Part shown: piece after piece, positions 14,711 through 60,686 of the stretch
How the letters are laid out: each line of letters opens with the position of its first letter
How positions within the stretch are numbered: position 1 is the stretch's first letter
NCBI RefSeq assembly: GCF_021869535.1
Contig: NW_026262581.1
Span: 125,240,001 to 125,304,000 of the forward strand
Direction of reading: 5' to 3'
Source: Mytilus californianus
Taxonomy: Eukaryota
Length of the DNA: 64,000 bases
Translations under genes and position numbers: made by a program
The notes under the pieces: model-generated
What the model was told of the DNA's origin: nothing
Databases searched by the model: none
The model's input: the letters and a program-made list of their open reading frames with translations, nothing else

Positions 14711-14783
14711 CTGCTCTAATATAACCAAGCAATCCGCCTGCTGTCACTGTTAAAGCGTAAGCAATGCTGACAAAATCGGTCAT
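14711..14783 (-). CDS. TMEM14C: TMEM14-family transmembrane protein, coding exon 1 (MTDFVSIAYALTVTAGGLLGYIRA+G); an in-frame upstream ATG at 14807 would add MSTNQKEN
   Basis: ATG at 14783, donor G|GTTGAT at 14710. The peptide matches the TMEM14 N-terminal pattern (D..Y...V..GG..GY..AGS). Four exons join in frame to a 101-aa, three-helix protein. The paralogue letter (C) is tentative. Confidence 0.9.
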
Positions 14784-14851
14784 GTTTTCCTTCTGGTTTG
14801 TCGACATGGTTATCTTCCCCTTGTCACAATCAGGGGACATAATTAAACACC

Positions 14852-14893
14852 ATGACAAGTGCAAGTTCAAGTTTCCCAGTGAAAACAAAACAG
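14852..14893 (+). CDS. PSMG3: Proteasome assembly chaperone 3, coding exon 1 (MTSASSSFPVKTKQ)
   Basis: ATG at 14852, donor CAG|GTAAAC, 42 nt, phase 0. Joins in frame to the 18149 exon. FPVKTKQ corresponds to the PAC3 N-terminal strand. Confidence 0.8.
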
Positions 14894-17191: not shown

Positions 17192-18148
17192 TTATTTTTT
17201 CTGAGACAAGTTCCTGTGTGGATGATGAATAAATGACAGAGAATTCAACCTCACCGTAATAATTATTATATTGTAGTGATATAATCATGGGACAATCATT
17301 TGTTATCAGTATAATCTGGTTTGTTGTTATATATTATATTAATATTTGTACAACAGTTATATATATAGCAGATCATCTTAATAACCCTACCGGCAAATTT
17401 TCATCCATTTATACCATCATTCTATTCTATTACAATGTATTCTAATGATAGTGCAGTGCAAGTGCATGGTGGACACTCTTCTGTAATAATTCGTTTTTCT
17501 AATAGGTTTGATTTTAGTAGGCATTCATATTTCTCCCGCTAATGAATATGTATTGATGAAATTAATATATAACAAGCGATAAGTGATATTCATCCGCAAA
17601 CACAATTTTTCGGTACGTGTGCATAGATATTAATGATTTTTTTACTTATATATATATATTTCTCAGGACAAAACATTTTCATATTTATTTATGTTCTTAA
17701 AAAATATTTTCATGAGTATTCATTGAAGAAATGAATTTATTACAAGAGATGAGGAATGTTATTTTGCACTCGATGATATCCGCGTATTTATACAAAACAC
17801 GTTCGGTTATCAGTCAAAAACGCAAGTCATGTGGGTAGAAATGTCTGCGGCAACATAACACAGGAATGCCCTCAAGGTCATCCGCTGTAAAAATTGAAAC
17901 CCTTTAAGTAGTAAGTATACAATATAAGATTGTGTACAAAGGGCAATAACCCTAACTCTAATTCAATTTAACAAACACTGGAAGTCTGAAATATAAATAT
18001 TGAAAAATAAAGACTGAATTAAAATGAAAACTATAACTCTTTTATCCATGATGAAAAAAATAAAATAAAAATACTATCTTTTCAGGAATGAAAAATAGAT
18101 ATTCAAAATTCTTTAGTCTTGATAAAGGTTTAGTTAAATTTGTTTCAG

Positions 18149-18250
18149 ACAACAGAATTAATTGGTGGACACAATACACAGGTTCTCTGCAGCCATTTTA
18201 GTGATAAGCTATTTATTATAGTCACACAGCTTAACAAGATTGGAAATTTG
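18149..18250 (+). CDS. PSMG3: PSMG3 coding exon 2 (TTELIGGHNTQVLCSHFSDKLFIIVTQLNKIGNL)
   Basis: Acceptor tgtttcag, donor TTG|GTAAGT, 102 nt. Aligns by eye to human PAC3 KTEVVCGVPTQVVCTAFSSHILVVVTQFGKMGTL (recalled sequence). Confidence 0.9.
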
Positions 18251-18913
18251 GTAAGTTAAATTCATACCACTGAGTATAGATAAACTATATGTGTAAGCAG
18301 TACAAAAAACTGTATATTGAAAATAGAAATATCAGCACATTGTTAATACATGTAATAAAAAGGAATACTGAATATTATTGCTAGTTTCAATACATGGGCT
18401 TGATAACTCAGAATTTATAACCAGGGTAAACCTTTGCCATCTCTTGGCGTCTACAGTGCATCAGAAATTCCTTTACAATTTAAAATCAAGGCATAAGAAA
18501 ACACGCATCAATTATTTCAGGGGATAACCAAATTTATTAGCCTTAGCATGCACCCCTTTTAAAATTTAAGTGTTGAAAATAAGCTGATGGCCTATGTAAG
18601 TATGATTTTTGTAATGGATAATCCGCACCAGAAAGAAGGCTGAATGCTGAACCAGTTGATGATATTTGTTGACTAAAACATAAATATTTAGGTTATTAAG
18701 CATAATTTTATTTTAATACCATCTTATCTGCTATAAGAAAATATTTTTATACATTACTAGTCTGATACAATATCTTTGATATTTTTCACTAGGAATAGCA
18801 TCAAATGATTCATCCAGAAGTCTTAGATGCTCACCACTTGTATTAAATGAAACAAAGTATTACACAGAAAGCACTTGAAATAATAGTTGGTTTTGATTTT
18901 ATTTATTGAATAG

Positions 18914-19000
18914 ATAGAAGTACAAAGAGATGTGGTGTTAGACGAAGAAGCAGGAAGACAACCAATGTATTCAACACGAGTTCTACTAGGCGTTGATGAG
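18914..19000 (+). CDS. PSMG3: PSMG3 coding exon 3 (IEVQRDVVLDEEAGRQPMYSTRVLLGVDE)
   Basis: Acceptor ttattgaatag, donor GAG|GTAATG, 87 nt, phase 0. Carries the PAC3 motif T.VLLG.DE. Confidence 0.9.
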
Positions 19001-19314
19001 GTAATGTAAAGACGCATAAAGCCATGGTAACTTAAGCTTTCTTTTTGTGTACAAGGGCAAGAAGTTGTTTTTATCACAAAACTCAGTATTTTTAGCAGAC
19101 TTTACCGTTTTCACCACCTAAAAAAACACCTCCAAACACAAGAACCTGCTTCTTTTATTACAAATCCATAAAATTCATAAAATCATAACTTGGCTAAATA
19201 TTTTTGCAATTTAGATTTTAAATGTAGGAGATTTTGGCTGTTCCTGTTTAGGCCTTCAATAGTTTTGATGGTTTTTAATGTTTTGATATGTTTGACTTTC
19301 CAAACACTTACCCT

Positions 19315-19600
19315 GACCTGGTCAAATGAAAAACTTTTGTATTGGTATTTGCTGCAGCATTAAGGAGTAAGAGCAAAGACTGGTCAGCTTGGAGTCAGAA
19401 TAATGTGTCCAGGTAAGGTGATATGTCTTCCTGCAGACTTTTACCTTGTGAACTGCCACGTTAAAAATCCGGCTCAGCTTGTCGGTCTAGTACAAAGCAG
19501 GGTTAATATTCGTATTACATTAACATGTTCTCGTCCTGAATATGCATATTAATTTGCTGCTGGACGTTAAGCAGCCATCCCTCATCATCATCCTCAAAAC
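19315..19600 (+). mobile_element. SINE fragment resembling mollusc Nin-domain SINEs
   Basis: ggtatttgctgc..gcagcattaaggagtaagagcaaagactgg...aataatgtgtcc...ggtctagtacaaagc... with a (cat)n-like tail. Family name is from recall. A diverged inverted fragment lies at about 21580-21710. Confidence 0.5.
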
Positions 19601-19638
19601 ACTGATGATGACATGCACACTGAAATCTGTATCATACA

Positions 19639-20470
19639 TTTATTGTCCTCCGCGTAACGTGCTGCGGGGACATGAAAATAGCAGGTGTCCATCCGGTTTT
19701 GTAAGCGCTCTCACATGAACAATTCCTGCAAGATTTTTATGAAACTTATATCATAGATTTATATCAGCAATATCTTGGAGGAGTTCGAAAATCAGTGCGG
19801 ATAAACAATTTTAAAAGAGTTATGCCCCTTGGACACATTAATTTTATGGAAAATTGCATCGTTAGCGCTGTCATGTGTACAATTCTTGTTAGACTTTTAT
19901 GAAACTTATATCATAGGTTTATATTAGCAATGTCTTGGACAAGTTCGAAAATCAGTGCTGATCAATTATTTTTAAAAGAGTTATGCCCCTTGGAAACATT
20001 AATTATATGGAAAATTACATTGTTAGCACTCTTAATTTGTACAATTCTTGCCAGATTTTTATGAAACTTATATCATAGGTTTATATGAGCAATGTCTTTA
20101 ACGAGTTTCGGAAATCAGTACTGACCAATTATTTTAAAAGTGTTAAGCCCCTTTAAAACATTGATTTTATGGAAAATTGCATTGTAAATGCTCTCGCATG
20201 TACAATTTTTGCAGATTTTTATCAAATTCATATCAAAGGTATATAACAGCAATGTCTCAGACAATTTTAAAAATAAGAGCCCATCGAATATTTTTAAAGA
20301 GTTTCCCTTGGAAATATTAAATATATCGGAAATTGTTCTCAAGTCTTCAACTCTCTAGTAAGATCATTTTAAAAAGTTTTAAAGAACAAAAACATTTTTT
20401 TTTTGTTATTGTCCTTGGACAGAACAGTTAAAATATGTGCAAGACGGGGGACATTGGAACTCTGTTCTCT
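19639..20470 (+). mobile_element. HINE-like element with about four 160-bp internal repeats
   Basis: 5' tgtcctccgc...gcggggaca, 3' gacgggggaca. The unit ttttatgaaacttatatcatag recurs at about 19735, 19894, 20057 and 20217. Confidence 0.7.
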
Positions 20471-21579
20471 TATATTGCTATTGATTTGATAAAAAGATTA
20501 ATTTGTTCTGTTGTTTGTTTTCCATGTAGGCCTAATTTTATTGCTTTTATATACTGTAAACAGGGAAACTTTTGCGGCAGTTTTATTATTCGCTAATTTA
20601 GCGGTAAGAGGTGAAACGCAAAAAATAAAAGGAACTGGTGCGAATTTTTCAAGGAAAATCAATTTAAAGGATGAGGACCATACATGAACCTATACCAATA
20701 GGTTTATGAACTGGAGCAATTTATAAAAACAATTTTACAGACTTTTTTTAATAAATAAAGGGCAGCATCAGAAATCAAAACTTTAACTCATGACAGTCGA
20801 ATTCAAATGAAAGTCATCTCGAGCAAGTGCAAATTATTGATATTGTTATTAAACAACACCCGTGACAGTTAAGTTAATGACACATTTTAATAATTTTTGA
20901 ACTAATTACCATATTGCATCTGCTACAGAGATTATTATGATCAAAAGATTAATTACTTGAAATCCTCAAAGCTTAAGTAGACAATTCTTCTCTTTTATTT
21001 GTTTTTGTGTTTTTACAAGCAAACATAAATATAGAGGTTTAATTTAACTTACTAGTAATATCAATCAAATAACTTTATATTTTAAATTCATGAACTGACA
21101 ATATCTGTTCACTTTGTCCAGACACTTGATTTACGATACATGTACCACTTTTATAAGTGTTTCAACGTCATTTATTAAAATTTGTAAAGGACCCTTTCAT
21201 TGTGAATTTAAAACATCACGAATTAAGATTCAGATGACAAATCGCGAAAAAAGACGGCCCAAAAATTTGCTGGTTTACAGTAGACGACTTTTAGATACAT
21301 GGATTTTACGATACATTTCCTTTGTCACAAAGCTTATGTTTGTATTACTTCACAGCATGAACCCATTTTTCAATGACTTTGTTTATGCTGATTGACCGCA
21401 GGTCATTCGATGTAACTCATTCATAAAAACAACTGGGCTAGGATTGTTGGTTGATCAATGAGTGCTGAATATCCATGACCAAGTATTTTATGCATATTTG
21501 GGACAATAACATATGTCAAAAGAATAAAGCCTGATTTGTACTAGTTAATCCTACATGATGTGTAGATTTTTAAAAATCA

Positions 21580-21710
21580 AGCTTGCAAAGCATAGTCATT
21601 GACCTCACTCCTTATACTGCATGCTATAGAGAAACTGCAAATACTTACTTTGAGGTCTTTGGTTTGACCTACCAGGAGATCAAGACATGACCTCTTGCAA
21701 TTGCATACTA
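21580..21710 (-). mobile_element. Diverged SINE fragment (same family as 19315-19600)
   Basis: Reverse complement reads ggtcaaaccaaagac...gtatttgcagtttctc..agcatgcagtataaggagtgagg. Confidence 0.45.
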
Positions 21711-22896
21711 CAATTTATAAACCACAGAAGAGTTTCCTGCTTTCATTGAAGATTATTTAACTCTAATATTACCACAGCAACATATACATGTATTCTATAC
21801 ATTTACATAAGCGATAGATTCTTATATCAGCTTTGAATTCTAAAATATTTTACACCTGCAATGACTTGTTTACTTTTCTACACCAAGGCACTTTTTTGCT
21901 GAACCATTGAAGTTTCATTCAGCCTCACATTCATACAATTATTTAAATGTGAATCCTTAGAAAAAAACTTGCTCTCGACAATTACCACCAACGATTCATT
22001 TCTAAGTACTAAGTACTGACCCTGAAAATCTGTGCACAAAAGTACTATGGGAATTGCACATGGTTGTGTCGTTCTGCACCGTTAGTGAAGTTATTCTATG
22101 AAATCTAATTAGGTAATAGATTATAAGGGAAGATGACTTCTTTATCAACAGATTCTGTACTTTGCAGGTGTTCTTTGATTATTTTGTATTGAATAAAAGT
22201 ATATGTACATTTTATTATTTTTCATTATGGAGTGAACGCCATCTGTAAAGGATAATACTATTTTTATAAAAAACAAATTTGTTGACTAGTTTTTATAGTG
22301 AGATTTGACTCTGTACCTTTGTGCTATTCTACAATTAGGATAACTGGGGGAAGAATTAGTACTTATACTAACAAATCTAATCATCCCATGTGCCTGTCAT
22401 AATTCCCACATCTTTTCAGTAAGTGGCATTTTGTCTAAATGATTTTGTATAATTAATTTTCTTAATGTCAGTCTTATCTACCATTGAAGTTAAATATTGA
22501 CATGTTGATGGCTTTTTGTTTGATGGTGTTGTTGGGTTGCTTTCTCATTGATGTTCACCCCTAATCTTATTTTAATGATAAGAAATGGCTGTAAGAATTT
22601 GTGGATTGTCCGTGTATGCTGATGTAGAAAATAGAATATCTTTCTATTTACTCTATCTATGGTATATATATGCTAATTGATGACAATGTATGTCATGACT
22701 TGTCTCCCATCTACCTCCTTGCTATATTAAATCTTATTGTTATGAACAGATGAGGACTTGTTCTTGTTCTTGGCAGATTTTACCAACAATGATCATCCTA
22801 ATACTTTTAAAATGAGTCAATATCAGCCATTTAAGTAAAACTGATGGAAAAAAAGAAAGAAAATAAAGATAAAGATTTTCAAGAAATTCAGAAATA

Positions 22897-30353: not shown

Positions 30354-31726
30354 TCAAGTCCTTCCTCGTGGCTGATGCATATGAACAAGTAGTATTGTAC
30401 AGATAGGATAATAGTGGAATGACCTAATATTTTTCAATGTTGAGTTATATCCTAAATGGGTCTCAGCCAAAAAAGCAATATCATATTTGTCTATTGACTT
30501 AATGAACAAGGGGTCACAAGTTTTGTCATAGCCCTTTGCAATGAGTCCCCCAACATTCCAAAAACACATTTTTAAATTTGAAAATGACATATGGGTTATT
30601 ATATTTTAACCTTTGCTAAAAAAAAAAATATACTTACAAAAGAAAATAATATAATAATACTTGTCTATCGTTTTAGAATAGACAAAATTGAAATTGAAAC
30701 TGATAAGGTTCTATATATATATATATCTATGACCTTTGATTCTTTTGTAAAATATAATGTTACATATACAAAAAAAAAAACAATATTGCCTTGATTAACA
30801 AAATCAGTATTGAAATTCTATTGTATAAATTAGTAATTAATGTCAGGATGGAGTTGTTTGTCTTCCACAACCTCTGGAACCTCTACCACGTCCTCTATTG
30901 ATACGAGAGTGACTACGATCATGTCGGGTGGGTAATGGAACACCCAATGTTGAGTGAATGGCTTGTTTAATATTGCTAGCTAACTGAGCAATTCCCTTTG
31001 TGCTAAGATAAAATTTATCCTCTGCAAGCATTTCTGGTGTAGGATTTCCACCAAAAGCCATATTGCTGTGATCAACAAACATAACATTCACTTCCGAAAA
31101 ACTCTGCTTCATAAGGGCATTAATAATTTGACTATTCGTATTATGAATAAGTGAATCACTCCTAGCCTATCAATATTTTCACCATTTTGACACTTGGTCA
31201 TTAATTAAGCTTTGTGTTTATTATATAATTAGGAAATAAAAAAAAAACAATTGTATATGTATGAAAGTAAATTGAACAGTAAGTTAATATAAGTATTAAG
31301 CTTCATCTATGTAGTCCTAGGTGTTGTGAGTGAAACTATGATTTTCATCGATACCCATTTTTGTTGCATTGATAAGATTATATCACCTAGCTCTTTAACA
31401 CAATCTTGTGGTGATTTAGATTTTAAATCATTAGTTAACACATGAAGTACCATTATATCTGGAGGATGATTAAACTTTGAAATGCATTTTCTGGTGTCAT
31501 CCAGAGTGTATGCAGTAAATTTGGTGATTTGCGCTGCTGTGGTTAGTTTATCTTCATTGATTCCTTGGATATTTGAAGTACAGACTAAATAAACAGTTGG
31601 CTTAACTGATTCTCTTGTAAGGTTAGGCTTTGTTTTAGAATCGTCAACTGAAGCCTTCGTGAGACGGAGTTCATCTAAAGCATCAGATAAATGTGTTTTG
31701 AGAGAAAGAGCATATATAAACTTCAA
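30354..31726 (-). mobile_element. Decayed non-LTR retrotransposon: ORF1 fragments (SGNH-esterase-like) and the start of ORF2 (AP endonuclease)
   Basis: ORF2 start FWNVGGL...DIAFLAETH (APE motifs WN..GL and L.ET). ORF1 pieces VCTSN...LHVLTNDL...IVSLTTPR and DKFYLSTKG resemble SGNH blocks (G.S, GTND, D..HL). Interrupted and truncated; clade (CR1/L2 group) uncertain. Confidence 0.75.
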
Positions 31727-32934
31727 TGCTTTCTTGATATCACAGGCTGCAGGTCAAATTATCTGGTTTAACAATTGGCCCGAGTAACACCCCAAGTATT
31801 GTACATATATGCAAATTAATAGATTGATCAGCTGAAATTTTTTGACTTTCTTCCATTAAAATTAAATGAAACCCTAAATTTGGTATAAATATTGATATAT
31901 TGCCAGCATTACCTCACTAGGTAGTTTACCAAGACCCCAAATTTGGAACTCTGGTGTAGGCTCTTCAAGAATGTACCCAGCTGGGCCTTTTGGCCCGGAA
32001 AGTCTCAGGTGATGCAGTGCCTGGCATTTGTTTCTAGTGTGAAAAAATGCTTTGCTGTAGGGATCTTTTAAGAATTAAAATTAGGAAGGGGTAGTCTCTC
32101 CAGATTCAAAATTTGGACTCCTGTTTAATCTTATCGTCCAATTCTCACTTTGCAAACATGCTGCAGCAATCAACTTCTTTTAATATACCAGTTCCTATGA
32201 TACCTTAGACTTGCTACATGTCCCTTCCTTATTATGTTTTTTTTTTCAATTTTGCCCATTTAATAATTTTACTGCTATAACTAAGAGATTACCATTATAC
32301 TGACATCTGCCCTTTCTCCAAGGGCAATCAGTATACTGGCAGTTTTCAGTAAACATATAATTAGTAAGAAAGAAATAAAAGAAAGGGAATTGTAGCAAGT
32401 CTAATGATACCCATACACAGATTAATCATTATAATTCCAGTTCATTATGTAATGGCTAATGTTGCAACGTTTGTTAAAATTTGTTTTTTACTTTGCAAAA
32501 AAACAAGTGAGAAATAAAAATTGTGATGTGGAGGAACAGGCAACATTGCTAAAAAAAAAAAAAACCAACAACTAAAAGATGAGTTTACAATGCACTACAA
32601 AGAAAACTTCAGATTGAGCAATTTGAATCTAAACAACAACATGGATAAACTCATGTGCTCTGTAGAAATAAGCCAATTCTGCTATATTTAGTCACATGAA
32701 ATTTTACCTAAGACCTAGTGACTTAAAGTCAATTGGGATCTTCTTCTCATAATATATGACCACATATCTAAGTTAGTTTGCAATCTGGTTTTAAATATTT
32801 GATAAAGCATCAAAAAACCTCTTTCCTGCACAAATTTTGGTCTATTTTTAGCAACTATGACCATGACCTTAGACATACTGACCTCAAAATCAATAGGGAT
32901 CTTCCTCTCAATATATGTGACCATATGTTTAAGT

Positions 32935-39680: not shown

Positions 39681-40864
39681 TCATACAACTTCACTTATGT
39701 TACTTTTTTTCTGAATTTCTTCATTAATGGCATGAAGTGACTTGCAAAGATGAATAAATCGTGGACGGTTGGTCGGTTTCTTACTCCAACACAATCGCAT
39801 TAACTCGTACAAAGCTTTAGGAGTTTTATCCGGACATGCCAGGACTTTGCCGTCCTTTATAAACTGAACAACTTCTTCGTGAGACATACCATAATATGGT
39901 TGTAGAGCGTAAGAAAACACTTCCCATAATACAATACCAAATGACCAGACATCAGATTCTGATGTGAATTTGTTATAAAGTATTGATTCTAAGGGCATCC
40001 AGCGAATAGGAATAGCGTCATGATCGCTGCCCTTATAATATTCCATACTATGAACACTTCTAGCTAAACCGAAGTCTGATATTTTAACAATCAAATTTTC
40101 ACCAACTAAACAGTTACGGGTGGCTAAGTCTCGATGAACATAACCATTATCTGATAAGTATACCATCCCAGTACATATCTGCATGATGATATTCATTTGT
40201 TGATTAGTTCCCACATGGTGGAATAGTTCTGAGGATTTTTTATCCACACTATTACGTCTAATTATGTAATTACTTTCTGAACTACAAAGTCTCAAAAATC
40301 CATTCAAATCACCGTTTTCCATAAATTCAAATAATAAACACATAGGCTTGCCTATTGCACAAATGCCCAATAATTTAACAATGTTTCGATGATCGAATTC
40401 AGCCATCAATGAAGCCTCTCTTTCAAAATCTTGTTGGAGATCTTCACTAGCATCATCTTTCAACATTTTTACAGCAACAAAACAATCCTCTGAATCTTCA
40501 ACTAGGTTCTTGGCCTTAGCTTTGAACACACGTCCAAAAGCACCTTGACCTATGTCACATAAGTATACAACATCATTTCTAGGATATTCCAAGGTTTGTA
40601 ACTTGGGGTTAAGTTTAATATCAGCCATCTTGTGATAAGAAATATTTGGCTGAAGTTTGTCCACATCAATGTCAAGGTCATCTTGTGGTGTTGAATTGTA
40701 TTTTATACTATGTCTCTGTCTAAAGATTTGGTAGCATAATATGCAAATGAGAGCAACAACAAATATTCCAACTGCTGTTACGGTAGAAACAATAGCAATG
40801 GCTTCTGTTGTCATAGTTGGTTTTTCTTCTTCCACTCGTCCTGTGGGTATTCGGATTTCTCCAT
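39681..40864 (-). CDS. MUSK: MuSK-like RTK terminal exon: transmembrane helix, juxtamembrane region and complete tyrosine kinase domain
   Basis: Acceptor ttttacag at 40866-40865. TM AIAIVSTVTAVGIFVVALICILC; LNPKL..LEYPRN; GQGAFGRVF; VAVK; HRDLATRN; DFG; DAIPIRWMPLESI. These are MuSK/Nrk-type rather than Ror/Trk-type motifs. TGA at 39683-39681. Confidence 0.95.
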
Positions 40865-43362: not shown

Positions 43363-43605
43363 CACATTTAGGAACATCACATCTCTCCCATCTTATGATT
43401 CTATCTTGTGTATAACACCAAGGAGAATCCTCCTCAGATCCAGGATTTCTACAATAATTTTCTGCTCCCTCGAGACTGGGGAAGACATCTGGTGGTCTCT
43501 GATGATTATGTGGATTCTGTGATTCCCAAGCCTGGCAAGCTATTCCTGATTTAGTAGAGTTCACTGTACCATTATACCACTGTCCTGTTCCTTTGTAGCA
43601 GGAAT
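43363..43605 (-). CDS. MUSK: MuSK-like RTK, Kringle domain exon
   Basis: Acceptor tttgttag, donor TGTG|GTAGGT, 243 nt, phase 1-1. Has 6 Cys and the motifs CY.G.G..Y.G, NYCRNP, PWCYT. Confidence 0.95.
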
Positions 43606-44088: not shown

Positions 44089-44261
44089 TTTTGGTTTCTT
44101 CAGGTTTCCTTACAAACATAGGGATATCTACACACTTCATGGTAGGATCTAGTTTATCTGGAAGTGTTTCACATATTGGTAATTTATATCCATCCATAGA
44201 ATGGACAACCATCAGCCATGCATCAAAACAAAGGAGTTCCTTCACTGCTAAACAACTTTGT
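44089..44261 (-). CDS. MUSK: MuSK-like RTK, Frizzled CRD second exon (QSCLAVKELLCFDAW...LPICETLP...KCVDIP)
   Basis: Acceptor tctttgcag, donor AAAA|GTATGT, 173 nt, phase 2-1. Pattern C..V...C...W...LP.C..LP is typical of MuSK/Ror CRDs. Confidence 0.9.
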
Positions 44262-48520: not shown

Positions 48521-48775
48521 CTGCACATATGTATTGGCTTGGCCTCTCCATTTTCATGATGACAGCTTGGGTATACATGGTTACAGAAGACTTTCTTTGC
48601 ATTAGACAGACATCTGTCACTCAAGGGGTTTAAGTTTTTCTTGATATCATGAAGCATGTCTATAACATCTCTGTCCAACTTCTCAAATGATACATTGACA
48701 ATCTTGTGGATTTGACCAGAATCTATTTCTGCACTGCAAAAACTTCCATTGTAAGGTACACACTGCCCAATTGGT
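48521..48775 (-). CDS. MUSK: MuSK-like RTK, Frizzled cysteine-rich domain, first exon (PIGQCVPYNGSFC...VFCNHVYPSC...IHMC)
   Basis: Not in the ORF track. Acceptor ttttttcag, donor AG|GTAAAT, 255 nt, phase 2-2. Has 6 Cys here plus 4 in the next exon, giving the 10 Cys of a Fz CRD. Confidence 0.9.
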
Positions 48776-49523: not shown

Positions 49524-51759
49524 GTTACATTATAAAGTCAACTCTTCAATTGGAACTCCATCCCATTTAACCCATCACTATCCCAAATTTTCTAGTATGC
49601 CCAGGTTTTTATTCCATCATCCTTGAAAATATGAAGAAGTGATAATTTGTGGCAGAAAAAATTGAAATATTACATCATCACATAATAAAGAGACAATCTG
49701 CAAGATGGTACACATTGTTAGACATAAATGTTTGCAGGTTCACATATGACAAGTTATTTTCCTTCTATTTATCAAACAAAAGAAAACAAGATGACAACTT
49801 GATGTCTTCATTGTAAATTCCATAATCTTCTTTGGAATTTCTTTCTATTGTCATGAACAGGAAGTTCATTTCAAGAGTTCATATTATGTCACAATTAATT
49901 ATTTGAGGTCCCATAACTCTGTCAATTCTAATAAAACTGCATTTCACTGGACATGTGTTTTTCAGAGATAATCAGTATTACATTCCAAGATCCTACATTT
50001 TTAGAAGTAATATGTCTGAGAAAAATATTTAGTTTTTTTTTGGTTTCTTAACCATTGTTAACCTGTTGTTACAAATCAAATATTTACCATTTTTAATTTT
50101 CAAACTTATATAGTATAATGTTAATGCAGGGAATTTAGGTCTTTTATAAAATTGTCTACATTTATTGTCATGTAGATTTCAAATTTTGGGGTGTTAAGGA
50201 ACTGTAAAACATCATTGTCAATCCTGTCACCTTGAGTCATGGATGAGTTCCATTATTATTTCAATCCTATTCATTTATGTTGTTCTAGAACTTGGCTTCA
50301 ATTCAAAATTAATAAACAACAAAAAGTTTGTCATTCTAAGCACCATGAAATGTGTCTGCCTTAAATGAAGTGTTTCAGGAATTAACTAAACAATATTTCT
50401 ACATATCTGTTTGACATAATAGCATATAAATTTTCTGAGAATGCTAAAAGATTTGCCATTTCAACCTAATATTCTATTTTATTATAATCAAATGCAGGAA
50501 GAAGCTGCGCTAAGCAGAATGTTATATCACTCCCTTTATTCAAAACTTTCTGTTCCACAATCTTATCTTCCTAAAGGGAAATATCTTATAAAATAACTCA
50601 TTAATGTTAAAGGGAAATAACTCTTAAAATAACTTGTAAATATATCAAAGATATGTTCAAATTACATTTCTGAATTGTTGAAAGTTAGAAATAATGTTTT
50701 ACAAAAACATTAATAATACTAAATATCAATATCCTCTTCAGAAAGTATTGATTATTTAGTTGTTGTAGGTTTGTATTTTTGTATTTTATGTATTTCTATG
50801 CAATGTACTTAATTGAGCCTTTACCGATTGTTATAATTGCATTTGTGCTAACAAAATTTTGTCTATTGTCTCTTTTTTGGGGTCTCATAAATAGATGTAC
50901 TTATAAATACTCATCTCTATTGAACATAAATGTAAGTAAATCATTTTTATTACTCAATTTAATGAAATTACAAAAATTCTCAAAATAAATGTTATTTACA
51001 CCTGTTTTATATAAAACCATTTAACTTTATATAATCCTTGAAAAAACAAACAGGTGGAGAGAGCAATAAATTTTATGTGTCATGATATAATTTTACATGT
51101 GTTTTACATGTGTAAGTAAGTACAAAATGACCGTAAATAATGGAGACAAATGGTTGCAAATTAAGTATAATTTCAATAAGCCCTTGTTTTAAAGGCAAAT
51201 AACATTATTCATGTTTGGAATTAATTATTACATGTACGAAAGTGACATGTTCTGTACTGATAAAAAACAATCTAAATGAAGACAAATTGTCTTGATCAGA
51301 ATCATGTGTAGTACCCCTATTATTTTCCAATAAATCACAATGTTTGTGTTTTGTTGATTTCTTATAATTACTGACACATGTTTTATATGACTGTCAATTT
51401 ACAAGCATTTCTTTTATACCTCAAGAGGCTACTTAACTCCTTAGTCCAAAAATATTTTACTCTCAACCAAATCAACATAGTGATTAATCCTATATGTTTG
51501 AAACATAAAAGTTAATATTTTATTACCAATATAATCTTTATTAAATATGAATAACTAATCCTTAAATTACATGAGAAATAATGCATGTAAACTGTTGAAC
51601 TAAAGTCTGCCAATATTTCACATAAACCAAATCAGTTTTGTTCCAGTCACACTTACTCATATTTTGTGTTTAATATAAGTAAAATACATTTGTGATGGAT
51701 ATGAATAATAGAAACAATTAACCCAATAAAATAAATTAAAAAATTAAAAATAAATGGGG

Positions 51760-52348
51760 AATGTGTCCATGGGACATAGATGATGCCCCCGCTTGCATAC
51801 CATATAAAGTTATAAAGGGACATAACTGAAGAACGGTAAAAGTGACACCACCAAAATTCAAATTTGATCTGTATTTTGTGGTTATAAGCATTGTGTATAA
51901 GTTTCATAACATTTGGTTGAGGCAATCTAAAGTTAGAGAACGGAAACGAAAAATTCAGCAATTTTTCCATTTATAAAGGGCATAACTCTAGAACGGTTAA
52001 AGTGACGCCACTCAAATTCAAACTTGATCTGTATTTTGTGGTAATAAGCATTGTGTATAAGTTTCATAACATTTGATTGAGGCAATCTAAAGTTAGAGAA
52101 CGGAAACGAAAAATTCAGCAATTTTTCCATTTGTAAAGGGGCATAACTCTAAAATGGTTAATGTGACGCCACCAAAATTCAAACTTGATCTGTGTTTTGT
52201 GGTAATAAGCATTTTCATGTTTTGTATAAGTTTCATAACATTTGGTTGAGGCAAACTTAAGTTAGAGAATGGAAACCAAATTTTGGACCTACGTACGGAC
52301 AGAGAAGGGTAAAACTTAATACCCCCTCCACTACGGCGGGGGCATGAA
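51760..52348 (-). mobile_element. HINE-like element (atgcccccgc family), minus copy
   Basis: Reverse complement of the 16211-17191 family; intact 3' hairpin (tgtcccatggaca on the minus strand). Confidence 0.8.
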
Positions 52349-53880
52349 AAATATCTATGGTCTTCAATAATAGATGAGAATCTGTACCAGATACAAAGCT
52401 ATAAGTCACCAAAGTTTGTGACAAGAAGTTAATATAGAGACTACCACAGACCTGCCATCAATATTATATCTTTCAAGGGCCATAATGATATAATAAAAGA
52501 CAACCACTGAGGATGTTCCCGACTTGAAACACGCACTTAACATGTTACTCTCCCCCTTTTCTTGAAGTATTTGATAAGTCTGTGTTCATTCCATCACTCA
52601 AATTTTCTGAATATTTCCTATCAGTCCTTAAGTTTGAATGTGTCTATTTGTTATTACAAGGATTTAGTGGGATCAATGTTAAACATAAAAACTTCCTCCA
52701 GACAGATTAAATAAACTTACATAATGAGAATAACACATAAAAATAAATATTTACAAATGTTTTAACAAGGCTTGTTACTCAGCCATGGTGAACTTAAAAC
52801 TTTCCCACCATTTTCCTTCCTCTCAGTTAATTCGACAGTATTTCGGGGTAATCAGTATTTTCTGATAAGTAATTTTGATACAAAAAGATTGCATATACCA
52901 AATAATTTATTTTATGGCTACTATTTCAAAGTATTTCAAAGTTAAATGAAGTTATCTTTCACAGAGCAGGAAGTCTGCACTTAAAATGCTTGTCACATAA
53001 TACAACCCAAGTGGCATCTCTTACATTTTACATGATATAACAAGTCTGTGAAGAGATAAGTCACACAATTTATGTGGCATACAGGAGACAAAAAGATGGT
53101 ACTAACATTGTCTCCAAAACTAAACATTATGAAAATATTTCTAAGTCTATTGAATGTGGAATTTCAATAGAAGAAAGAGGTTTTATTTCCAATTATGGGC
53201 CCCCAAATGGCAAAAAACATTTGATATTACAATAAAAACATCAATAAGAATCTTGGGTTCCCATTTTTAATAAAACTGCAGACTAGGACTCTTAATTCAA
53301 AAGTGACTAAAAGGTGTATGCTGATATTTTGTTTGATTAATTCATGCAATTTAAGTTCTATACAAATAATATGAAAATGAATTTCAATGTTGCTGTAACA
53401 GAACAGGACCTACTTAAAGAGCAAACAGTTTAATTTACAAACCATAAATAATGCAAAGTATAGTGACAAATCTTAAAAGAAAGGGATTTAGGGCTTGAAA
53501 TACTATATTTCTATATTTTCTTCTAAATCACATTATGTAGCAAGTAAAAAGAAATACTGTGAATTCATTTTTATTTGAATGGTATTAACATTAGTTGACT
53601 TTAAGTTTAAAAGTAAACCACAAATATAAGTGTTCAACAATTTCAAATTTCTTATAGATTTGTTTGCAGAATTTGAAAAAAAAACATGAAATCAAATATC
53701 CTCAAAAATACAAATTTTCCTTCGTCAACAATAATTGGTTACCATGAACATGAACGTATTCACAGTATCATGGGATCTGTCTTTCATTAACAAACAGGTA
53801 GGTGCAAATATAAAGCTAATAAATGTGCAATTAAGCAATCATCAAACTGCTAATTAATAATGAATTAAAGTTCTACTTAC

Positions 53881-53893
53881 TTGTACTTGGTTC
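53881..53893 (-). CDS. MUSK: MuSK-like RTK 13-nt microexon (G-T-K-Y-K linker between Ig2 and the Frizzled CRD)
   Basis: tttcttctgcag|GAACCAAGTACAA|gtaagt. It converts phase 1 to phase 2 exactly as needed to join the 57723 and 48775 exons. Confidence 0.8.
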
Positions 53894-53942
53894 CTGCAGA
53901 AGAAACAATAAACAAAATCAGTATTATATAAACAGACAACAT
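53881..53942 (-). CDS. MUSK: Putative alternative first coding exon encoding a signal peptide (MLSVYIILILFIVSSAGTKY), sharing its 3' end with the microexon
   Basis: ATG at 53942 in ccAacATG context, 62 nt, stop-free, in frame with the CRD exon through the same GTAAGT donor. Has a hydrophobic core and small residues (VSSA|G). Confidence 0.65.
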
Positions 53943-56900
53943 GTTGGTCACAACAGATCTCACAGCACAAAATATCGCAAATGAAACACCGTTTGTAATC
54001 TTGCAGAATTTTTTCGTTGGTAGATTTTTGGATTAAATTTCACTTTTTGCTCTTTGAAAAGTTTTATAACCCTTTTATTGGTTATAAAATCCTCAAAAGC
54101 TGTCAAATGTTTTATTGTTTTATGTCCACTTAAGCCAAGTAAGCATTCCAGCAAATAGAAAAAAATAAGTAAATGTCTCATGTAAGTGTTAAGTCAGCAC
54201 TATTGTCTTATTTCCTCTTATTTACAAAAATTCTCTCCATTTATTTCCTACAATTGTACCAGCACACTCAAGTAGATACAATGCTTTTCTCTCACAAACT
54301 ATGTGAAATTGAGTATGAAATAGACGTGTGAATTCTTCCAACTTTTTGTGTCGAATGTCTCTTTCAAGTCTAAACTAGTAATTACAGTTTTATAATAAGA
54401 CAAATTCCAATCCTGTGCACACACAATTGAAACATTAAAATCTGATTAGTCAAACTTTAACATAACAATAGATCAATTTAAGGTTCTCATAAAAATTTTG
54501 ACCAAATCCTTTAAGTCAACAAGAATTGAAATTATAAAAGTCCCGCTAGACCATATAATTATATTGAAGCTTATATATTGCCTCTTCTTGTTTATCTTTG
54601 GATGTAACTAGTCATTAAGATTTTCTTTATCTTTTCAAAAAGTTTTCGTCCTATCTCCATGAAATCAGATCAGAGTGGTGAATGAACAGTTTGGCTTAGC
54701 TGACAGTCGGAGTTTCTAATGTCAACATGCTGAGGAATCAGAGATAAGGCCCTATGGCTCTCTCTGATAGCAATGGAAATCGTTTACTACTATCTCTCAT
54801 GCTCCCATTGAGAAGGCACTTGGATACATATAAATGTTTTCACAAATGTTTCAAGATAAATATCAACCATTACCAATTTTTTCTTCCAATTTGTACATCA
54901 TACAAAACAGCTATTTTGATATATTGAAAAAATTATCAGTATCACCTGTTTTACTTGTTTTCATTTAATCTACTTGAGTTCTGCTATGTTTAAGTTGATC
55001 TTGAAAACTTCAGTCAAGTATTCTATGTTTCTAATTTGTTCTACAGATTTAAAATATTTTTTTGTATTTCGCACTTTTCATGAAGTTGCCACTCTCACGT
55101 CAGATATATTCTTGATAGGTCAAAATATTGAAATATTTATCATCACAAATGTAGCTTTTAGTCTGATAATCACAATCTTAGAATTATATAATTTCCCAGA
55201 AATTCTACAATTTAGTATCTTAAATCTGTGTTCATCTCTTTAATGATAACAATTTTCAAGGTAAGAAATCCAGGTACTGAGGCACAATGAAGACAAAATA
55301 AATAAAATAATGCATATTCCTGCCAAATTTTCTGATATGCAGTCTCTTAAAACACTGATAACAAAGTAAAAGATCCTCTGATAAAATAGAAAAAAAATCA
55401 CATTTCTTATGAAAAGCTACTTTCCATTCAAAGCACTCCTGTAATGTAAGTAAATGCAAGCATTCCACTGAGTTGATAATATCTAAACTATAAATCCATT
55501 AAGTCCAGATACAATTCTTAAATTGTTCAAATTACTTTCAAAATTATGCAGAAAATTTACTTTAAGCCATACTGCAGTAATTTTACTTTCTGATCAATTT
55601 ATTTGTTCCAATCTGTTTTAATAATCTTTTTTTTTTTCAATAAAAGAATTAAAATTTCTTTGCTTTTTATCAAGCTCAAGTTAAAAGTAATTTTCTCTCT
55701 TTTTCCCATCGAACACACACAATTTTCATCAGAATTGTTTCTGGTTCCCATGTGAATATTGAATGAGATTAAACTAGTCTTTTGTTTCCTTTGTGTCAAT
55801 TTATTATTACTCATCACAGAGTTTGATACACATCATCACAAACATTAATATGTCCCTGCCCAAAACCAAAACATATGCCTAATGGACCATTTAATTGAAA
55901 ACTGACCCTATGGACATGATGACTGACCAATGGACAATACTTATCATACCTGATTATCACTATAAAGACTTTTATGTTACTTTAATGGAGCATTATATTA
56001 CAGAATCACAATAAGATCAAAGGTCAAACAGCTTAATAACAGTAGACTGCTGTTAATACATTAGAAAAGCATGTCCAACACTAGAAAAGGGAGGGGGAGA
56101 CATAGAAATGAGAGGATAACAAAATAGAATTAATCAAAGGAAAAGGGAGCATGGAAATAGGGGAGAGACAACTTCATTATATGGCTACAGCAGTTAATAT
56201 CAGGAAATATTGAATAGGAATAATGGAAGTAAGCAAAATGAAAATATTGAAAGGGAACAGATTCCAAAAATGAAATGGCAACCAAAAATATATTCATACT
56301 ATTCTATACTTAGTTGAATAAGAAGATAAAAAAATATGGAGTTAGTGTAACATAAGAGAGCATGTATCAGATTAAAATCTATTTATCTTTTAAATTGAGG
56401 GTGGGCATAAATAATCTTCTGAACTTTTTTATAATATTATTGTGTATTAATTACATTGCTACAGTAACATCATCACTAACGTGTTAAGAATCTACTCTGT
56501 TTCAAATAAAATATTCATTGCTCTAGCAAATTTTGTAGAAAATATTTGACATTTTATTATTAAACATTATCCTTCATACTTTCGTGCTTATAAAATTAAT
56601 TATAAAGGATTTTATTCATTTGTTATTCAAAACTGATTAAATTTTCTCATCTAAATATCAATTCATTTCCATTGCTACATTCAATTACAAGTATCTAGAA
56701 CAAGAACAAAATAGTAAACAATGAAATAAAATTAATATCCTGAGGATAAAATAAAGTGGTTAGGAGAAAAACTATTATGAAATGGAATGGAAACAAAGAA
56801 GCATTAACAGATGTACGGAGACAAAGGGAAATCTTCATAACAACATCACATGAATCACAATATTTCTCAACTACTGACGCCTCTGGTCTCAAAAGACAAA

Positions 56901-57722: not shown

Positions 57723-57915
57723 CAGAACACATCATTGTAACCTGGACATCTTGTCTGACTATGGCAAGTTTACCAGGAGGTGATTTAGGCTTGTTGTATG
57801 CTCTACATCCGTACCTACTGGTCTCTGTGACATTTTTGATAAGGAGTCGTGACAGAACATCATTGCCTTGTACAGTTGTGTAGATAGAGATCCCATCAGG
57901 AGGTGTGCTACCAAG
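57723..57915 (-). CDS. MUSK: MuSK-like RTK, second Ig domain, second half (LGSTPPDG...SRYGCRAYNK...VTMMCS)
   Basis: Not in the ORF track; read directly. Acceptor ccttttcag, donor TCTG|GTAGGT, 193 nt, phase 0-1. Supplies the second Ig cysteine (Y.C.A.N). Confidence 0.85.
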
Positions 57916-59751: not shown

Positions 59752-59879
59752 CTCTACTCCATTTTTGCTCCAGATCATTGTTGGTACTGGAATCCCTGCT
59801 ACATTACAGACCAGCTGAACTGGGTTCCCACACTTTACAGTTCGGTTATATGGTATCAGTCCAACAAACTTGACTGGCA
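59752..59879 (-). CDS. MUSK: MuSK-like RTK, second Ig domain, first half (VPVKFVG...LVCNVAGIPVPTMIWSKNGVE)
   Basis: Acceptor ttttcag, donor GAG|GTATAG, 128 nt, phase 1-0. Contains the C...G.P.P...W.KNG Ig motif. Confidence 0.88.
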
Positions 59880-60374: not shown

Positions 60375-60686
60375 CTTGAACTTCTAAGAACACTTTGTGA
60401 GATATTAGTGTTTCGTTGCCATGTTTGACTTTGCAAAAGTATTCTCCCCTGTCCTTCACATGCACGTGTATAATCTTCAAACTTCCTGTCTTCTTATTTA
60501 TGTCATACTTAGCATGGCCAGTATCTTCATCTCGGCTAAATCTATCTTTTATTCTCTCACCATCCTTGAACCATTTATACAGTACATGATGATGGGAATT
60601 TGTACGTTTGTTAGCTCTACAGTGAAAGGTATGGCTGTAGTCAGCTGAAACAGTGGCATTTTTTGGTGGCTTAATAATTTCTAATT
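60375..60686 (-). CDS. MUSK: MuSK/Nrk-family RTK, Ig-like domain exon (most 5' exon found)
   Basis: Acceptor ccttttcag, donor CAAG|GTGAGT, 312 nt, phase 1-1. Has I-set Ig hallmarks FHC...YKWFKDG...DRGEYFC. The upstream signal-peptide exon was not found in the window. Confidence 0.85.

What the first reader, a model, noticed from the sequence alone, without database searches (positions are those of the whole stretch)
53881..53942. Dual-use exon: a microexon's polypyrimidine tract is also an in-frame signal peptide, which would give an Ig-less Nrk-like receptor from the MuSK locus
Seen: on the minus strand, ccaacATG TTG TCT GTT TAT ATA ATA CTG ATT TTG TTT ATT GTT TCT TCT GCA G|GA ACC AAG TAC AA|gtaagt reads MLSVYIILILFIVSSAGTKY(K), in frame with the CRD exon (PIGQC...). 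The same T-rich bases form the splice acceptor tract of the 13-nt internal microexon. Established: vertebrate MuSK has Ig domains before its Fz CRD, while Drosophila Nrk has only Fz-Kringle-TM-kinase. Inference: an internal promoter gives a 638-aa SP-Fz-Kringle-TM-TK receptor (62+255+173+243+1184 nt), and upstream transcription gives Ig-Ig-Fz-Kringle-TM-TK. Both architectures from one gene would suggest a simple route by which Ig-less Nrk-type receptors arose. Caveat: T-rich acceptor tracts tend to encode hydrophobic residues, so part of the signal could be coincidence. The well-placed ATG with A at -3 and the VSSA|G cleavage-like site argue against that.
Basis: partly seen in the sequence, partly recalled or inferred. 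Interest (0 to 1): 0.85.

Follow-up and report, generated by a model that had tools for sequence, protein, structure and literature searches.

The report
Mussel receptor exon with two uses
A 62-base stretch in a mussel MuSK/Nrk-type receptor gene appears to serve both as a 13-base internal microexon and, read from an upstream ATG, as a first exon encoding a signal peptide, and the same layout recurs in oysters, clams and squid.

Summary
It is 621/638 identical to Mytilus edulis RefSeq XP_071144710.1, which starts with the same MLSVYIILILFIVSSAGTK.

The 13-nt microexon is also real as an internal exon. It is required for frame between the Ig2 and Fz exons. Four Mytilus annotations and RNA contigs from another mytilid carry the Ig2-microexon-Fz junction.

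One such ORF is weak evidence: 5.6% of pyrimidine-rich pseudo-acceptors have an in-frame ATG plus a hydrophobic run. However, every molluscan lineage whose DNA or RNA I could read has one upstream of the homologous small exon:
- Saccostrea, where it is not annotated as a start
- Pecten, where it is less canonical
- Dreissena and Mya
- squid

Squid RNA contigs from at least six runs carry the Ig-less ORF.

No Mytilus transcript or start-site evidence could be obtained. M. galloprovincialis and M. trossulus RefSeq list only the long form.

Verdict: a probable hybrid first/internal exon (about 0.65). Hybrid exons are a known class, and both protein models are already in RefSeq. The conserved dual use and its bearing on Ig-less Nrk origins appear undescribed. 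The scan also noted the microexon separately on this same stretch (s1-312264).

The parts
53881..53942 (-). Hybrid exon in its first-exon form (62 nt of CDS): ATG at 53942-53940, 16 signal-peptide codons, then the 13 shared bases
   Evidence: Sequence. The spliced model is open for 638 aa and 621/638 identical to M. edulis XP_071144710.1. The ATG and ORF are kept in 4 Mytilus genomes.
53895..53942 (-). The 16 codons MLSVYIILILFIVSSA. The same bases form the pyrimidine tract (77% Y, 68% T in -25..-4) and the acceptor CAG of the microexon
   Evidence: Best 8-mer mean Kyte-Doolittle hydropathy is 4.1, with A at -1 and S at -3.
53881..53893 (-). 13-nt microexon GAACCAAGTACAA (phase 1 to phase 2), donor gtaagt
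   Evidence: Required for frame between 57723 and 48775. The junction CSGTK(N/Y)KPIGQC is present in four Mytilus annotations. Dreissena and Mya have homologous 13-nt exons.
54063..54081 (-). CCAAT (54081-54077) and TATAAA (54068-54063), 139 and 126 nt upstream of the ATG: a candidate core promoter, weak evidence only
   Evidence: Identical in 4 Mytilus genomes, but introns are about 90% identical overall. TATAAA occurs about 100 times per strand in the window; there are 11 CCAAT-TATAAA pairs in 128 kb. There is no ATG in the 204 nt upstream of the start in the window.
60375..60686 (-). Ig exon (312 nt, phase 1-1): the second Ig of the Mytilus long form
   Evidence: Pfam Ig_3/I-set; boundaries.
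59752..59879 (-). First half of the next Ig domain (128 nt)
   Evidence: Pfam Ig_3/I-set partial match.
57723..57915 (-). Second half of that Ig domain (193 nt), donor CTG|gtaggt, ends in phase 1
   Evidence: Matches M. galloprovincialis XP_076083572.1.
48521..48775 (-). Frizzled-type CRD exon 1 (255 nt), starts A|CCA ATT GGG CAG TGT
   Evidence: Pfam Fz.
44089..44261 (-). CRD exon 2 (173 nt)
43363..43605 (-). Kringle exon (243 nt)
   Evidence: Pfam Kringle, E=1.2e-24.
39681..40864 (-). Last exon (1184 nt including the stop at 39683-39681): juxtamembrane region, TM helix and tyrosine kinase
   Evidence: Pfam PK_Tyr_Ser-Thr, E=4e-92. The best solved relative is the MuSK kinase.

Best explanation
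Window 53942-53881 (minus strand) is a hybrid first/internal exon of a Mytilus MuSK/Nrk-family receptor tyrosine kinase gene.

Long form. When transcription starts far upstream, beyond the window, the spliceosome uses the T-rich tract and CAG at 53895-53894. It includes only the last 13 bases (53893-53881) as a microexon. This joins the last Ig exon (ending at 57723) in frame to the Frizzled-CRD exon (starting at 48775). The product is the long Ig-bearing receptor, 1362 aa in sister species.

Short form. When transcription starts in the preceding intron, within a few hundred bases of 53942, the same T-rich bases become coding. ATG 53942 opens a 16-residue signal peptide, MLSVYIILILFIVSSA|G. 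Its end coincides with the acceptor, and the shared gtaagt donor splices to the CRD exon. The product is a 638-aa Ig-less SP-Fz-Kringle-TM-kinase receptor with the architecture of insect Nrk.

Basis for each step:
- Shown: the sequence, the frames, both gene models in public annotation, and conservation of the ORF across molluscs.
- Shown in squid only: RNA that carries the Ig-less ORF.
- Inferred for Mytilus: the intronic promoter and actual use of the ATG.
For: (1) The exact model is verified: 638 aa, open, 621/638 identical to M. edulis XP_071144710.1, which begins MLSVYIILILFIVSSAGTKNK.

(2) Internal use. The microexon is needed for frame. The junction ..VTMMCSGTKNKPIGQC.. is in XP_076083572.1, XP_063408717.1, CAG2253374.1 and VDI16111.1. 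Spliced RNA contigs of another mytilid read ..ITMMCNPSIKQKQVGQC.. (1266 aa in 4.8-7.1 kb Logan contigs). Orthologues in scallops, oysters, Solemya, Mya and Babylonia are SP-Ig-Ig-Fz-Kr-TM-TK.

(3) First-exon use. The ATG and frame are kept in four Mytilus genomes. The only two variable sites in 51 nt are synonymous TTG/CTG changes.

(4) Recurrence in lineages whose flanking DNA is no longer alignable:
- Saccostrea: MQVNMLNLLLLFIIVYFVSA|D upstream of a 25-nt exon. It is not annotated as a start, so there is no ascertainment bias.
- Dreissena: MMELNVLVPFLFFMCCAANRKPA|E upstream of a 13-nt exon.
- Mya: MELKCVVFILFFMCCLPPMATT|D upstream of a 13-nt exon.
- Squid: MDTLLKWIFLFFFFICPFAGKT|E.
- Argonauta: MDILLNWMFFLFFIPLLLANHT|D.
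- Pecten: a 45-codon open frame with Met at -43 and a hydrophobic run.
The Met sits at -16 in Mytilus; Saccostrea has Mets at -20 and -16. It sits at -22 in Mya, squid and Argonauta, and Dreissena has Mets at -23 and -22. All have a purine at -3.

(5) Chance is 5.6% per pseudo-acceptor, or about 5e-7 for five independent lineages.

(6) In Dreissena and Mya the 22 nt before the AG are only 18-23% T, so the hydrophobic ORF is not merely the pyrimidine tract.

(7) Squid RNA contigs from at least six SRA runs (25 contigs) run unspliced through the putative acceptor and are spliced downstream. They encode only the Ig-less protein.

(8) In Dreissena, Mya and octopods, long and short models diverge exactly at this junction.
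Against: No Mytilus transcript, CAGE or RACE evidence was reachable. The visible Logan members of the Mytilus protein cluster are all genomic exon fragments, and 7 of its 22 members could not be viewed.

RefSeq for M. galloprovincialis and M. trossulus gives a single long product and no short isoform. The M. edulis short model comes with an upstream 744-aa model that ends by reading into the intron. That is the pattern expected when a predictor fails to bridge a 13-nt exon and takes the next in-frame ATG.

Conservation within Mytilus is uninformative, because the introns are about 90% identical throughout. T-rich tracts encode hydrophobic residues for free, and 5.6% of pseudo-acceptors look similar.

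The 16-residue peptide has no basic n-region and is at the short end for eukaryotic signal peptides. SignalP was not run.

The squid contigs all begin at a (CA)n repeat, so their true 5' ends are unknown, and they carry upstream ATGs. The Pecten ORF is atypical, with a 25-residue charged n-region.
Confidence: 0.65

Rival explanations
1. The segment is an internal microexon only. The gene makes only the long Ig-bearing receptor in Mytilus. The upstream ATG and hydrophobic ORF are an unused by-product of a strong pyrimidine tract, and the M. edulis 638-aa RefSeq model is an annotation artefact of failing to bridge the 13-nt exon.
For: Four Mytilus annotations give only the long form. The M. edulis locus is split, and the upstream model ends in intron read-through whose frame is not conserved with the window. 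Dreissena copy B shows the same split pattern: a 237-aa 'hemicentin-like' model plus a 653-aa model. 5.6% of pseudo-acceptors mimic the feature. Identity within Mytilus is uninformative.
Against: This reading needs the same accident (in-frame ATG, no stop, hydrophobic core, purine at -3, Met at -16 or -22) to occur in every lineage examined. That includes an oyster where nobody annotated it, and Dreissena and Mya where the sequence next to the AG is not T-rich. Squid RNA contigs carry exactly this ORF as the only product.
Confidence: 0.22
2. The segment is a first exon only. The Ig exons upstream belong to a separate gene encoding a secreted Ig protein (as in the M. edulis RefSeq split), and 53942-53881 is the sole first coding exon of an Ig-less Nrk-type gene.
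For: M. edulis RefSeq has two models, XP_071144698.1 (744 aa) and XP_071144710.1 (638 aa). Dreissena has an equivalent pair. Frame compatibility of 57723 with 53893 has a one-in-three chance of arising by accident.
Against: Spliced RNA contigs of another mytilid (1266 aa), of oysters (854-855 aa, dozens of contigs) and of a scallop (862 aa) join Ig2 to the CRD through a short linker. Four Mytilus annotations use the microexon. The read-through tail of the 744-aa model is in a different frame in the window (GRYTINFHF... versus GTYILPLFSS...), so it is not a conserved coding end.
Confidence: 0.08
3. The short-form RNAs are incompletely spliced long-form pre-mRNAs (retention of the intron upstream of the microexon) and not products of an internal promoter. 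The ORF is then seldom or never translated.
For: The squid contigs extend about 650 nt upstream, contain upstream ATGs and stop at a repeat, so no start site is defined.
Against: The octopus gene spans 714 kb, so a retained intron would be enormous. Contigs from six runs pass the acceptor without a branch, and no long-form contig sits in that protein cluster. Retention also would not explain why the ATG, the frame and the hydrophobic core are conserved across molluscs.
Confidence: 0.05

Closest known systems
Hybrid first/internal exons (HIT-index class; Fiszbein et al. 2022, PMC8769537; NAR 2024, PMC11797052)
   Same: One exon with a single 5' splice site is used either as an internal exon through its 3' splice site or, extended upstream, as a first exon from a nearby start site. 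[quoted passage not shown] Here the flanking introns are 3.8 and 5.1 kb and the donor is gtaagt.
   Different: The internal form is only 13 nt. The extension is coding, and its codons are the acceptor's pyrimidine tract, so the switch replaces three Ig domains with a signal peptide. The layout appears conserved across bivalves and cephalopods. First-exon use is not yet shown by start-site data in Mytilus.
Drosophila Nrk (neurospecific receptor kinase; ECD structure 7ME4, bioRxiv 10.1101/2021.04.29.442059)
   Same: The short form has the same SP-Fz CRD-Kringle-TM-kinase architecture without Ig. The best contiguous solved match of the mussel ectodomain is 7me4 (150.6 bits, residues 22-250). That 7me4 is fly Nrk is from my own knowledge. 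Insect orthologues of 630-660 aa are the top non-mollusc hits.
   Different: In the mussel the Ig-less protein would be one isoform of a gene that also encodes an Ig-bearing form. Insect genes appear to encode only the Ig-less form.
Vertebrate MuSK
   Same: The kinase domain is closest to MuSK among solved structures: 410-453 bits, against 289 for Trk and 232-258 for ROR1/2. The long Mytilus form has three Ig domains followed by an Fz CRD, like MuSK.
   Different: The mussel protein keeps a Kringle domain. The long form has about 420 aa of Cys-rich and low-complexity insert after Ig1. Known human MUSK splice variants concern exon 10 in the CRD (PMC4213890, abstract), not an Ig-less form driven by an alternative promoter.
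RefSeq models XP_071144710.1 (M. edulis, 638 aa) and XP_076083572.1 / XP_063408717.1 (M. galloprovincialis / M. trossulus, 1362 aa)
   Different: No single annotation lists both as isoforms of one gene, and none notes that the start codon and signal peptide lie inside the acceptor tract of the microexon.

Membership tests
MuSK/Nrk branch of the ROR-family receptor tyrosine kinases | Extracellular Frizzled-type cysteine-rich domain | tested here: met
   Pfam Fz matches the 48775-48521 exon (E=1.7e-6, below gathering on the single exon). It passes on the full proteins: 37.1 bits against a cutoff of 32.1.
MuSK/Nrk branch of the ROR-family receptor tyrosine kinases | Membrane-proximal Kringle domain | tested here: met
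   Pfam Kringle, 86.8 bits, E=1.2e-24.
MuSK/Nrk branch of the ROR-family receptor tyrosine kinases | Single TM helix followed by a tyrosine kinase domain closest to MuSK | tested here: met
   PK_Tyr_Ser-Thr, E=4e-92. The hydrophobic segment AIAIVSTVTAVGIFVVALICILCY is read directly from the last exon. PDB ranking is MuSK 410-453 bits, then Trk 289, then ROR1 258. No phylogenetic tree was built.
MuSK/Nrk branch of the ROR-family receptor tyrosine kinases | N-terminal Ig domains (MuSK-type) versus none (Nrk-type) | tested here: met
   Both are encoded. Ig exons lie at 60686-57723 (Pfam Ig_3/I-set) and join in frame through the microexon. The short model lacks them.
Hybrid first/internal exon | Used as an internal exon through its 3' splice site | tested here: met
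   Frame requirement. Four Mytilus gene models carry the junction. Spliced RNA contigs in another mytilid carry it too. No Mytilus junction reads were seen directly.
Hybrid first/internal exon | Used as a first exon from a start site just upstream, sharing the same 5' splice site | not testable with these tools
   No CAGE or RNA-seq reads are available for Mytilus. Indirect support comes from the M. edulis RefSeq model, ORF conservation in six further lineages and squid RNA contigs.
Cleavable N-terminal signal peptide | Hydrophobic h-region of at least 7-8 uncharged residues near the N-terminus | tested here: met
   LSVYIILILFIV; best 8-mer mean Kyte-Doolittle hydropathy 4.1.
Cleavable N-terminal signal peptide | Small neutral residues at -1 and -3 of the cleavage site | tested here: met
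   S-S-A|G: A at -1 and S at -3. This is a heuristic only.
Cleavable N-terminal signal peptide | Positively charged n-region, and a positive call by a trained predictor (SignalP) | not tested
   No K or R precedes the h-region. SignalP is not available in this tool set.

The most novel reading that the evidence does not exclude
The two-promoter design built on this hybrid exon was already present in the ancestral conchiferan mollusc, and perhaps in the ancestral protostome, MuSK/Nrk gene. In that design an Ig-bearing MuSK-like receptor and an Ig-less Nrk-like receptor come from one gene, and the Ig-less signal peptide is written into the microexon's acceptor region. On this reading the Ig-less Nrk of insects descends from the internal-promoter isoform after loss of the upstream Ig exons. 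Long Ig+Fz+Kr forms persist in a mite and in amphioxus.
Probability: 0.3. Interest if true: 0.75.

Novelty: new member of a known kind. Interest (0 to 1): 0.6.

Why it matters
If the short form is made, a single promoter choice switches a Wnt/agrin-type receptor between a form with an Ig-domain ectodomain and a form without one. Ig domains mediate ligand and co-receptor binding in vertebrate MuSK; that is established knowledge and was not tested here.

It would also be a clear case of the same nucleotides being constrained both as a splice-acceptor tract and as signal-peptide codons, apparently maintained since bivalves and cephalopods diverged.

It gives a concrete, testable path for how Ig-less Nrk-type receptors of insects could arise from an Ig-bearing MuSK-like ancestor: keep the internal promoter and lose the upstream exons.

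There is a practical point for annotators. The locus is annotated inconsistently: split into two genes in M. edulis and Dreissena, long-only in M. galloprovincialis and M. trossulus, and short-only in Argonauta. Recognising the hybrid exon would reconcile these models.

Tried and rejected
(1) Conservation among four Mytilus genomes as a test of the ATG and ORF. The introns are 85-98% identical wherever they align, so the microexon region (0.94) does not stand out. This is uninformative.

(2) Promoter motifs. CCAAT and TATAAA lie 139 and 126 nt upstream and are conserved in Mytilus. TATAAA is common in this AT-rich DNA, and the motifs are absent in the other lineages. I kept this only as a weak lead.

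(3) Looking for Mytilus short-form transcripts among Logan proteins. The visible cluster members are genomic exon fragments, and 7 of 22 members could not be displayed.

(4) Genomic DNA for Octopus bimaculoides (gene range 714 kb) and Babylonia (169 kb) was not delivered. Look-ups with non-longest isoforms P0121 and P0123 failed and were repeated with P0154 and P0156.

(5) Cross-lineage DNA alignment of the flanks. Between Dreissena and Mya, and between Mytilus and Saccostrea, nothing aligns colinearly except about 21 nt inside the signal-peptide segment.

(6) The idea that the M. edulis 744-aa upstream model is a real secreted Ig protein. Its tail is intron read-through in a frame not shared with the window, so I treat it as a probable artefact.

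(7) Literature searches for mollusc MuSK/Nrk isoforms found nothing relevant. The scan's own notes only repeat the microexon observation.

(8) SignalP, a phylogenetic tree of MuSK/Nrk/ROR, and structure prediction were not run. The first is unavailable, and the others would not bear on the question.

Full report
**What is in the sequence.** Stop-to-stop frames and Pfam scans of the minus strand show one receptor gene. It has an Ig exon, a second Ig domain split over two exons, an Fz-type CRD, a Kringle, and a last exon with a TM helix and a tyrosine kinase.

The exons are 53942-53881, 48775-48521, 44261-44089, 43605-43363 and 40864-39681, that is 62+255+173+243+1184 = 1917 nt. Every internal boundary is AG/GT, and the product is 638 aa with no internal stop. 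The upstream exons are 60686-60375, 59879-59752 and 57915-57723. Joined through the 13-nt microexon 53893-53881 to the same downstream exons, they give an open 832-aa partial protein. The exon ending at 57723 ends in phase 1, and the CRD exon needs two bases from upstream. The two cannot be joined directly, so an intervening exon of length 1 mod 3 is required. The 13-nt exon meets this.

**Public gene models.** A search with the last exon returned a 638-aa M. edulis RefSeq protein, XP_071144710.1. It begins MLSVYIILILFIVSSAGTKNKPIGQC, and the window's short model is 621/638 identical to it.

The same 90% cluster holds four long models:
- M. galloprovincialis XP_076083572.1 (1362 aa)
- M. trossulus XP_063408717.1 (1362 aa)
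- M. edulis CAG2253374.1 (1383 aa)
- M. galloprovincialis VDI16111.1 (1251 aa)

All four read ..DVQVTMMCSGTKNKPIGQCVPYNG.., which means they use the microexon. The window's long partial model is 810/832 identical to residues 531-1362 of XP_076083572.1.

M. edulis RefSeq instead splits the locus. XP_071144698.1 (744 aa) carries the upstream part and ends ..MMCSGTYILPLFSSPAILDIIHYLF, which is read-through into the intron after 57723. XP_071144710.1 starts at the ATG of the finding. In the window that read-through is in another frame (GRYTINFHF...), so the tail is not a conserved coding end.

The Mytilus long form has three Ig domains, Fz, Kringle and kinase. About 420 aa of Cys-rich and low-complexity sequence follows the first Ig. 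Those exons lie beyond the window end.

**Is the microexon used?** Support comes from the frame argument and the four annotations. In addition, Logan contigs of 4.8-7.1 kb from another mytilid (86% identical kinase) encode uninterrupted 1260-1266-aa proteins. These must be spliced RNA. They read ..DVQITMMCNPSIKQKQVGQCVQYNG.., that is Ig2, a short linker one codon longer than in Mytilus, then the CRD. Orthologues in scallops, oysters (many RNA contigs of 854-855 aa), Solemya, Mya and the gastropod Babylonia are all SP-Ig-Ig-Fz-Kr-TM-TK. I consider internal use well supported, at about 0.9.

**Is the ATG and signal peptide more than chance?** On its own, barely. I took 928 pseudo-acceptors from the window and four other mollusc loci. 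Each had YAG, at least 68% pyrimidine in -25..-4, and no AG nearby. In the same frame:
- 17.5% have an ATG 14-45 codons upstream with no stop
- 5.6% also have an uncharged 8-mer with mean hydropathy of at least 2.0
- 1.6% also have small residues at -1/-3

Alignment of the window with the M. edulis, M. galloprovincialis and M. trossulus loci shows the ATG and the frame kept. The only two variable sites in 51 nt are synonymous TTG/CTG changes. But the whole 9-kb interval is 85-98% identical wherever it aligns, so this has no discriminating power.

**The comparative result.** Protein models from other molluscs come in long and short versions that diverge exactly at this junction:
- Dreissena: ..VVVTPNN|ETSQSYRAQGVC versus MMELNVLVPFLFFMCCAANRKPA|ETSQSYRAQGVC
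- Mya: ..GIWLL|DTSKSSVGLC versus MELKCVVFILFFMCCLPPMATT|DTSKSSVGLC
- Octopods: ..NIRPS|DADKRSNHGYC (Octopus) versus MDILLNWMFFLFFIPLLLANHT|DADKRSSHGYC (Argonauta)

I then read the DNA:
- Dreissena has ATG..CCTGCAG|AAACCAGCCAAAG|gtaact.
- Mya has ATG..CTACAG|ACACAAGCAAAAG|gtaaat.

Both have a 13-nt microexon, the same length as in Mytilus. In both, the signal-peptide ORF is contiguous with the acceptor.

To avoid ascertainment bias I examined two lineages with no annotated short form:
- In the oyster Saccostrea the small exon is 25 nt. The open frame directly upstream reads TMQVNMLNLLLLFIIVYFVSA|D. It has a Met at -16, as in Mytilus, a second Met at -20, and the same VSA ending.
- In Pecten the small exon is 37 nt, or 34 nt with a NAGNAG acceptor. 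The frame upstream is open for 45 codons, with a Met at -43 and a hydrophobic run CFVVWIIVIL. It is present but not canonical.

Between Dreissena and Mya, and between Mytilus and Saccostrea, nothing in 900 nt aligns colinearly except about 21 nt inside the signal-peptide segment. These are therefore effectively independent samples. At 5.6% each, five lineages give about 5e-7.

Met positions cluster. A Met lies at -16 in both pteriomorphs (Saccostrea also has one at -20), and at -22 in Mya, squid and Argonauta, with Mets at -23 and -22 in Dreissena. All starts have a purine at -3. In Dreissena and Mya the 22 nt before the AG are only 18-23% T, so there the hydrophobic ORF is not simply the pyrimidine tract.

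**RNA evidence, in cephalopods only.** Twenty-five Logan contigs of about 3.6 kb encode the Ig-less 650-682-aa protein. The six I read come from six different SRA runs. Each has about 650 nt of non-coding sequence upstream of ATG GAT ACC.. and fully spliced downstream exons. They run through the putative acceptor (..aaaacag|AAGCG..) without a branch. No Ig-containing contig is in that cluster. All begin at a (CA)n repeat, so the true 5' end is unknown. The octopus gene spans 714 kb, so an intronic start site is far more economical than intron retention.

**Family placement.** Among solved structures the kinase is closest to MuSK (410-453 bits), ahead of Trk (289) and ROR1/2 (232-258). The ectodomain's best contiguous match is 7me4 (150.6 bits), followed by human ROR2 CRD-Kr. 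The preprint describing the fly Nrk ectodomain states that its CRD is most similar to the MuSK CRD. Insect orthologues are 630-660 aa and Ig-less. A mite protein (913 aa) and amphioxus MuSK-like isoforms carry Ig+Fz+Kr. This is compatible with an Ig-bearing ancestor.

**How it most likely works.** With upstream transcription, the T-rich tract and CAG at 53895-53894 act as the 3' splice site, and 13 nt are included. With transcription starting in the intron shortly upstream of 53942, there is no upstream donor. The tract is then read as codons 1-16, the predicted cleavage falls at the former splice junction (VSSA|G), and the shared gtaagt donor joins the CRD exon.

This matches the described class of hybrid first/internal exons (PMC8769537, PMC11797052). 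The steps shown are the sequence, the frames, both models and cross-mollusc conservation of the ORF. RNA is shown in squid only. The Mytilus promoter, its use and cleavage of the peptide are inferred. CCAAT at 54081-54077 and TATAAA at 54068-54063, together with the absence of any ATG in the 204 nt upstream, are weak leads only.

**Verdict.**
- dual use, about 0.65
- microexon only, about 0.22
- first exon only, about 0.08
- retained-intron RNA, about 0.05

The two proteins are already in RefSeq, and hybrid exons are a known class. Neither literature search found a description of the following: the two models belong to one gene, they pivot on a 62-nt exon whose acceptor tract doubles as signal-peptide codons, and the arrangement recurs across bivalves and cephalopods. 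I rate it a new member of a known kind, of moderate to good interest.

Noticed in passing
L001:1-6248 and 10001-22877 (M. edulis); window 57722-57622: M. edulis RefSeq splits this locus into a 744-aa 'uncharacterized protein' and the 638-aa kinase. The 744-aa model ends by reading into the intron after the Ig2b donor. The corresponding read-through in the window is in a different frame, so that C-terminal tail is probably an annotation artefact. Dreissena has the same split pattern (237-aa 'hemicentin-1-like' plus 653 aa).
   Followed up: partly
beyond window end (>64000, minus strand upstream); P0136 residues 1-530: The mytilid long form carries an extra N-terminal signal peptide, a third Ig domain and about 420 aa of Cys-rich and repetitive acidic sequence (..EHLDVKS.GNE.SVE.. 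repeats). Other bivalve orthologues (about 860 aa) lack this. RNA contigs of another mytilid (1266 aa) show it is expressed. Pfam finds no VWC domain there.
   Followed up: partly
window 54361-54960 and 55761-55960: These intronic blocks are 93-98% identical across four Mytilus genomes, which is higher than the neighbouring exons' flanks. No explanation was sought.
   Followed up: no
window 51760-52360 and 50660-50860: These stretches are absent from the aligned M. edulis, M. galloprovincialis and M. trossulus introns. The first holds repeated ORF pieces (..LLNFSFPFSNFRLPQ.NVMKLI..), which looks like a lineage-specific repeat or transposon insertion.
   Followed up: no
window 7075-8459 (minus strand): Tandem copies of a unit of about 525 nt, each open in one frame (..KSKYMVRFSISKNPIYSIFVEIKQSLILDPNLD..). 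It appears to be a satellite or repeat-protein-like array of unknown nature.
   Followed up: no
window 30357-31753 (minus strand): ORF fragments that look like a decayed non-LTR retroelement. There is an AP-endonuclease-like N-terminus (..WNVGGL..AFLAETHL..) next to an SGNH/GDSL-like segment. Judged by eye only.
   Followed up: no
L011:14465-14488 (Mya arenaria): The Mya long model includes an extra 24-nt cassette exon (GHSGIWLL) between the Ig2b exon and the 13-nt microexon. It is absent from the Dreissena long model.
   Followed up: no
L012:43641-43646 (Pecten maximus): A NAGNAG acceptor (cag|tag) at the small pre-CRD exon explains scallop isoforms X1 and X2, which differ by one residue. The oyster RNA contigs of 854 and 855 aa differ by one extra residue at the corresponding junction, among other substitutions.
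   Followed up: partly
L001:32431-32877; window ~14700-14900: A PAC3/PSMG3 gene lies downstream of the kinase gene in M. edulis, in line with the scan note on a TMEM14-PSMG3 head-to-head pair in this window. Synteny is conserved.
   Followed up: no
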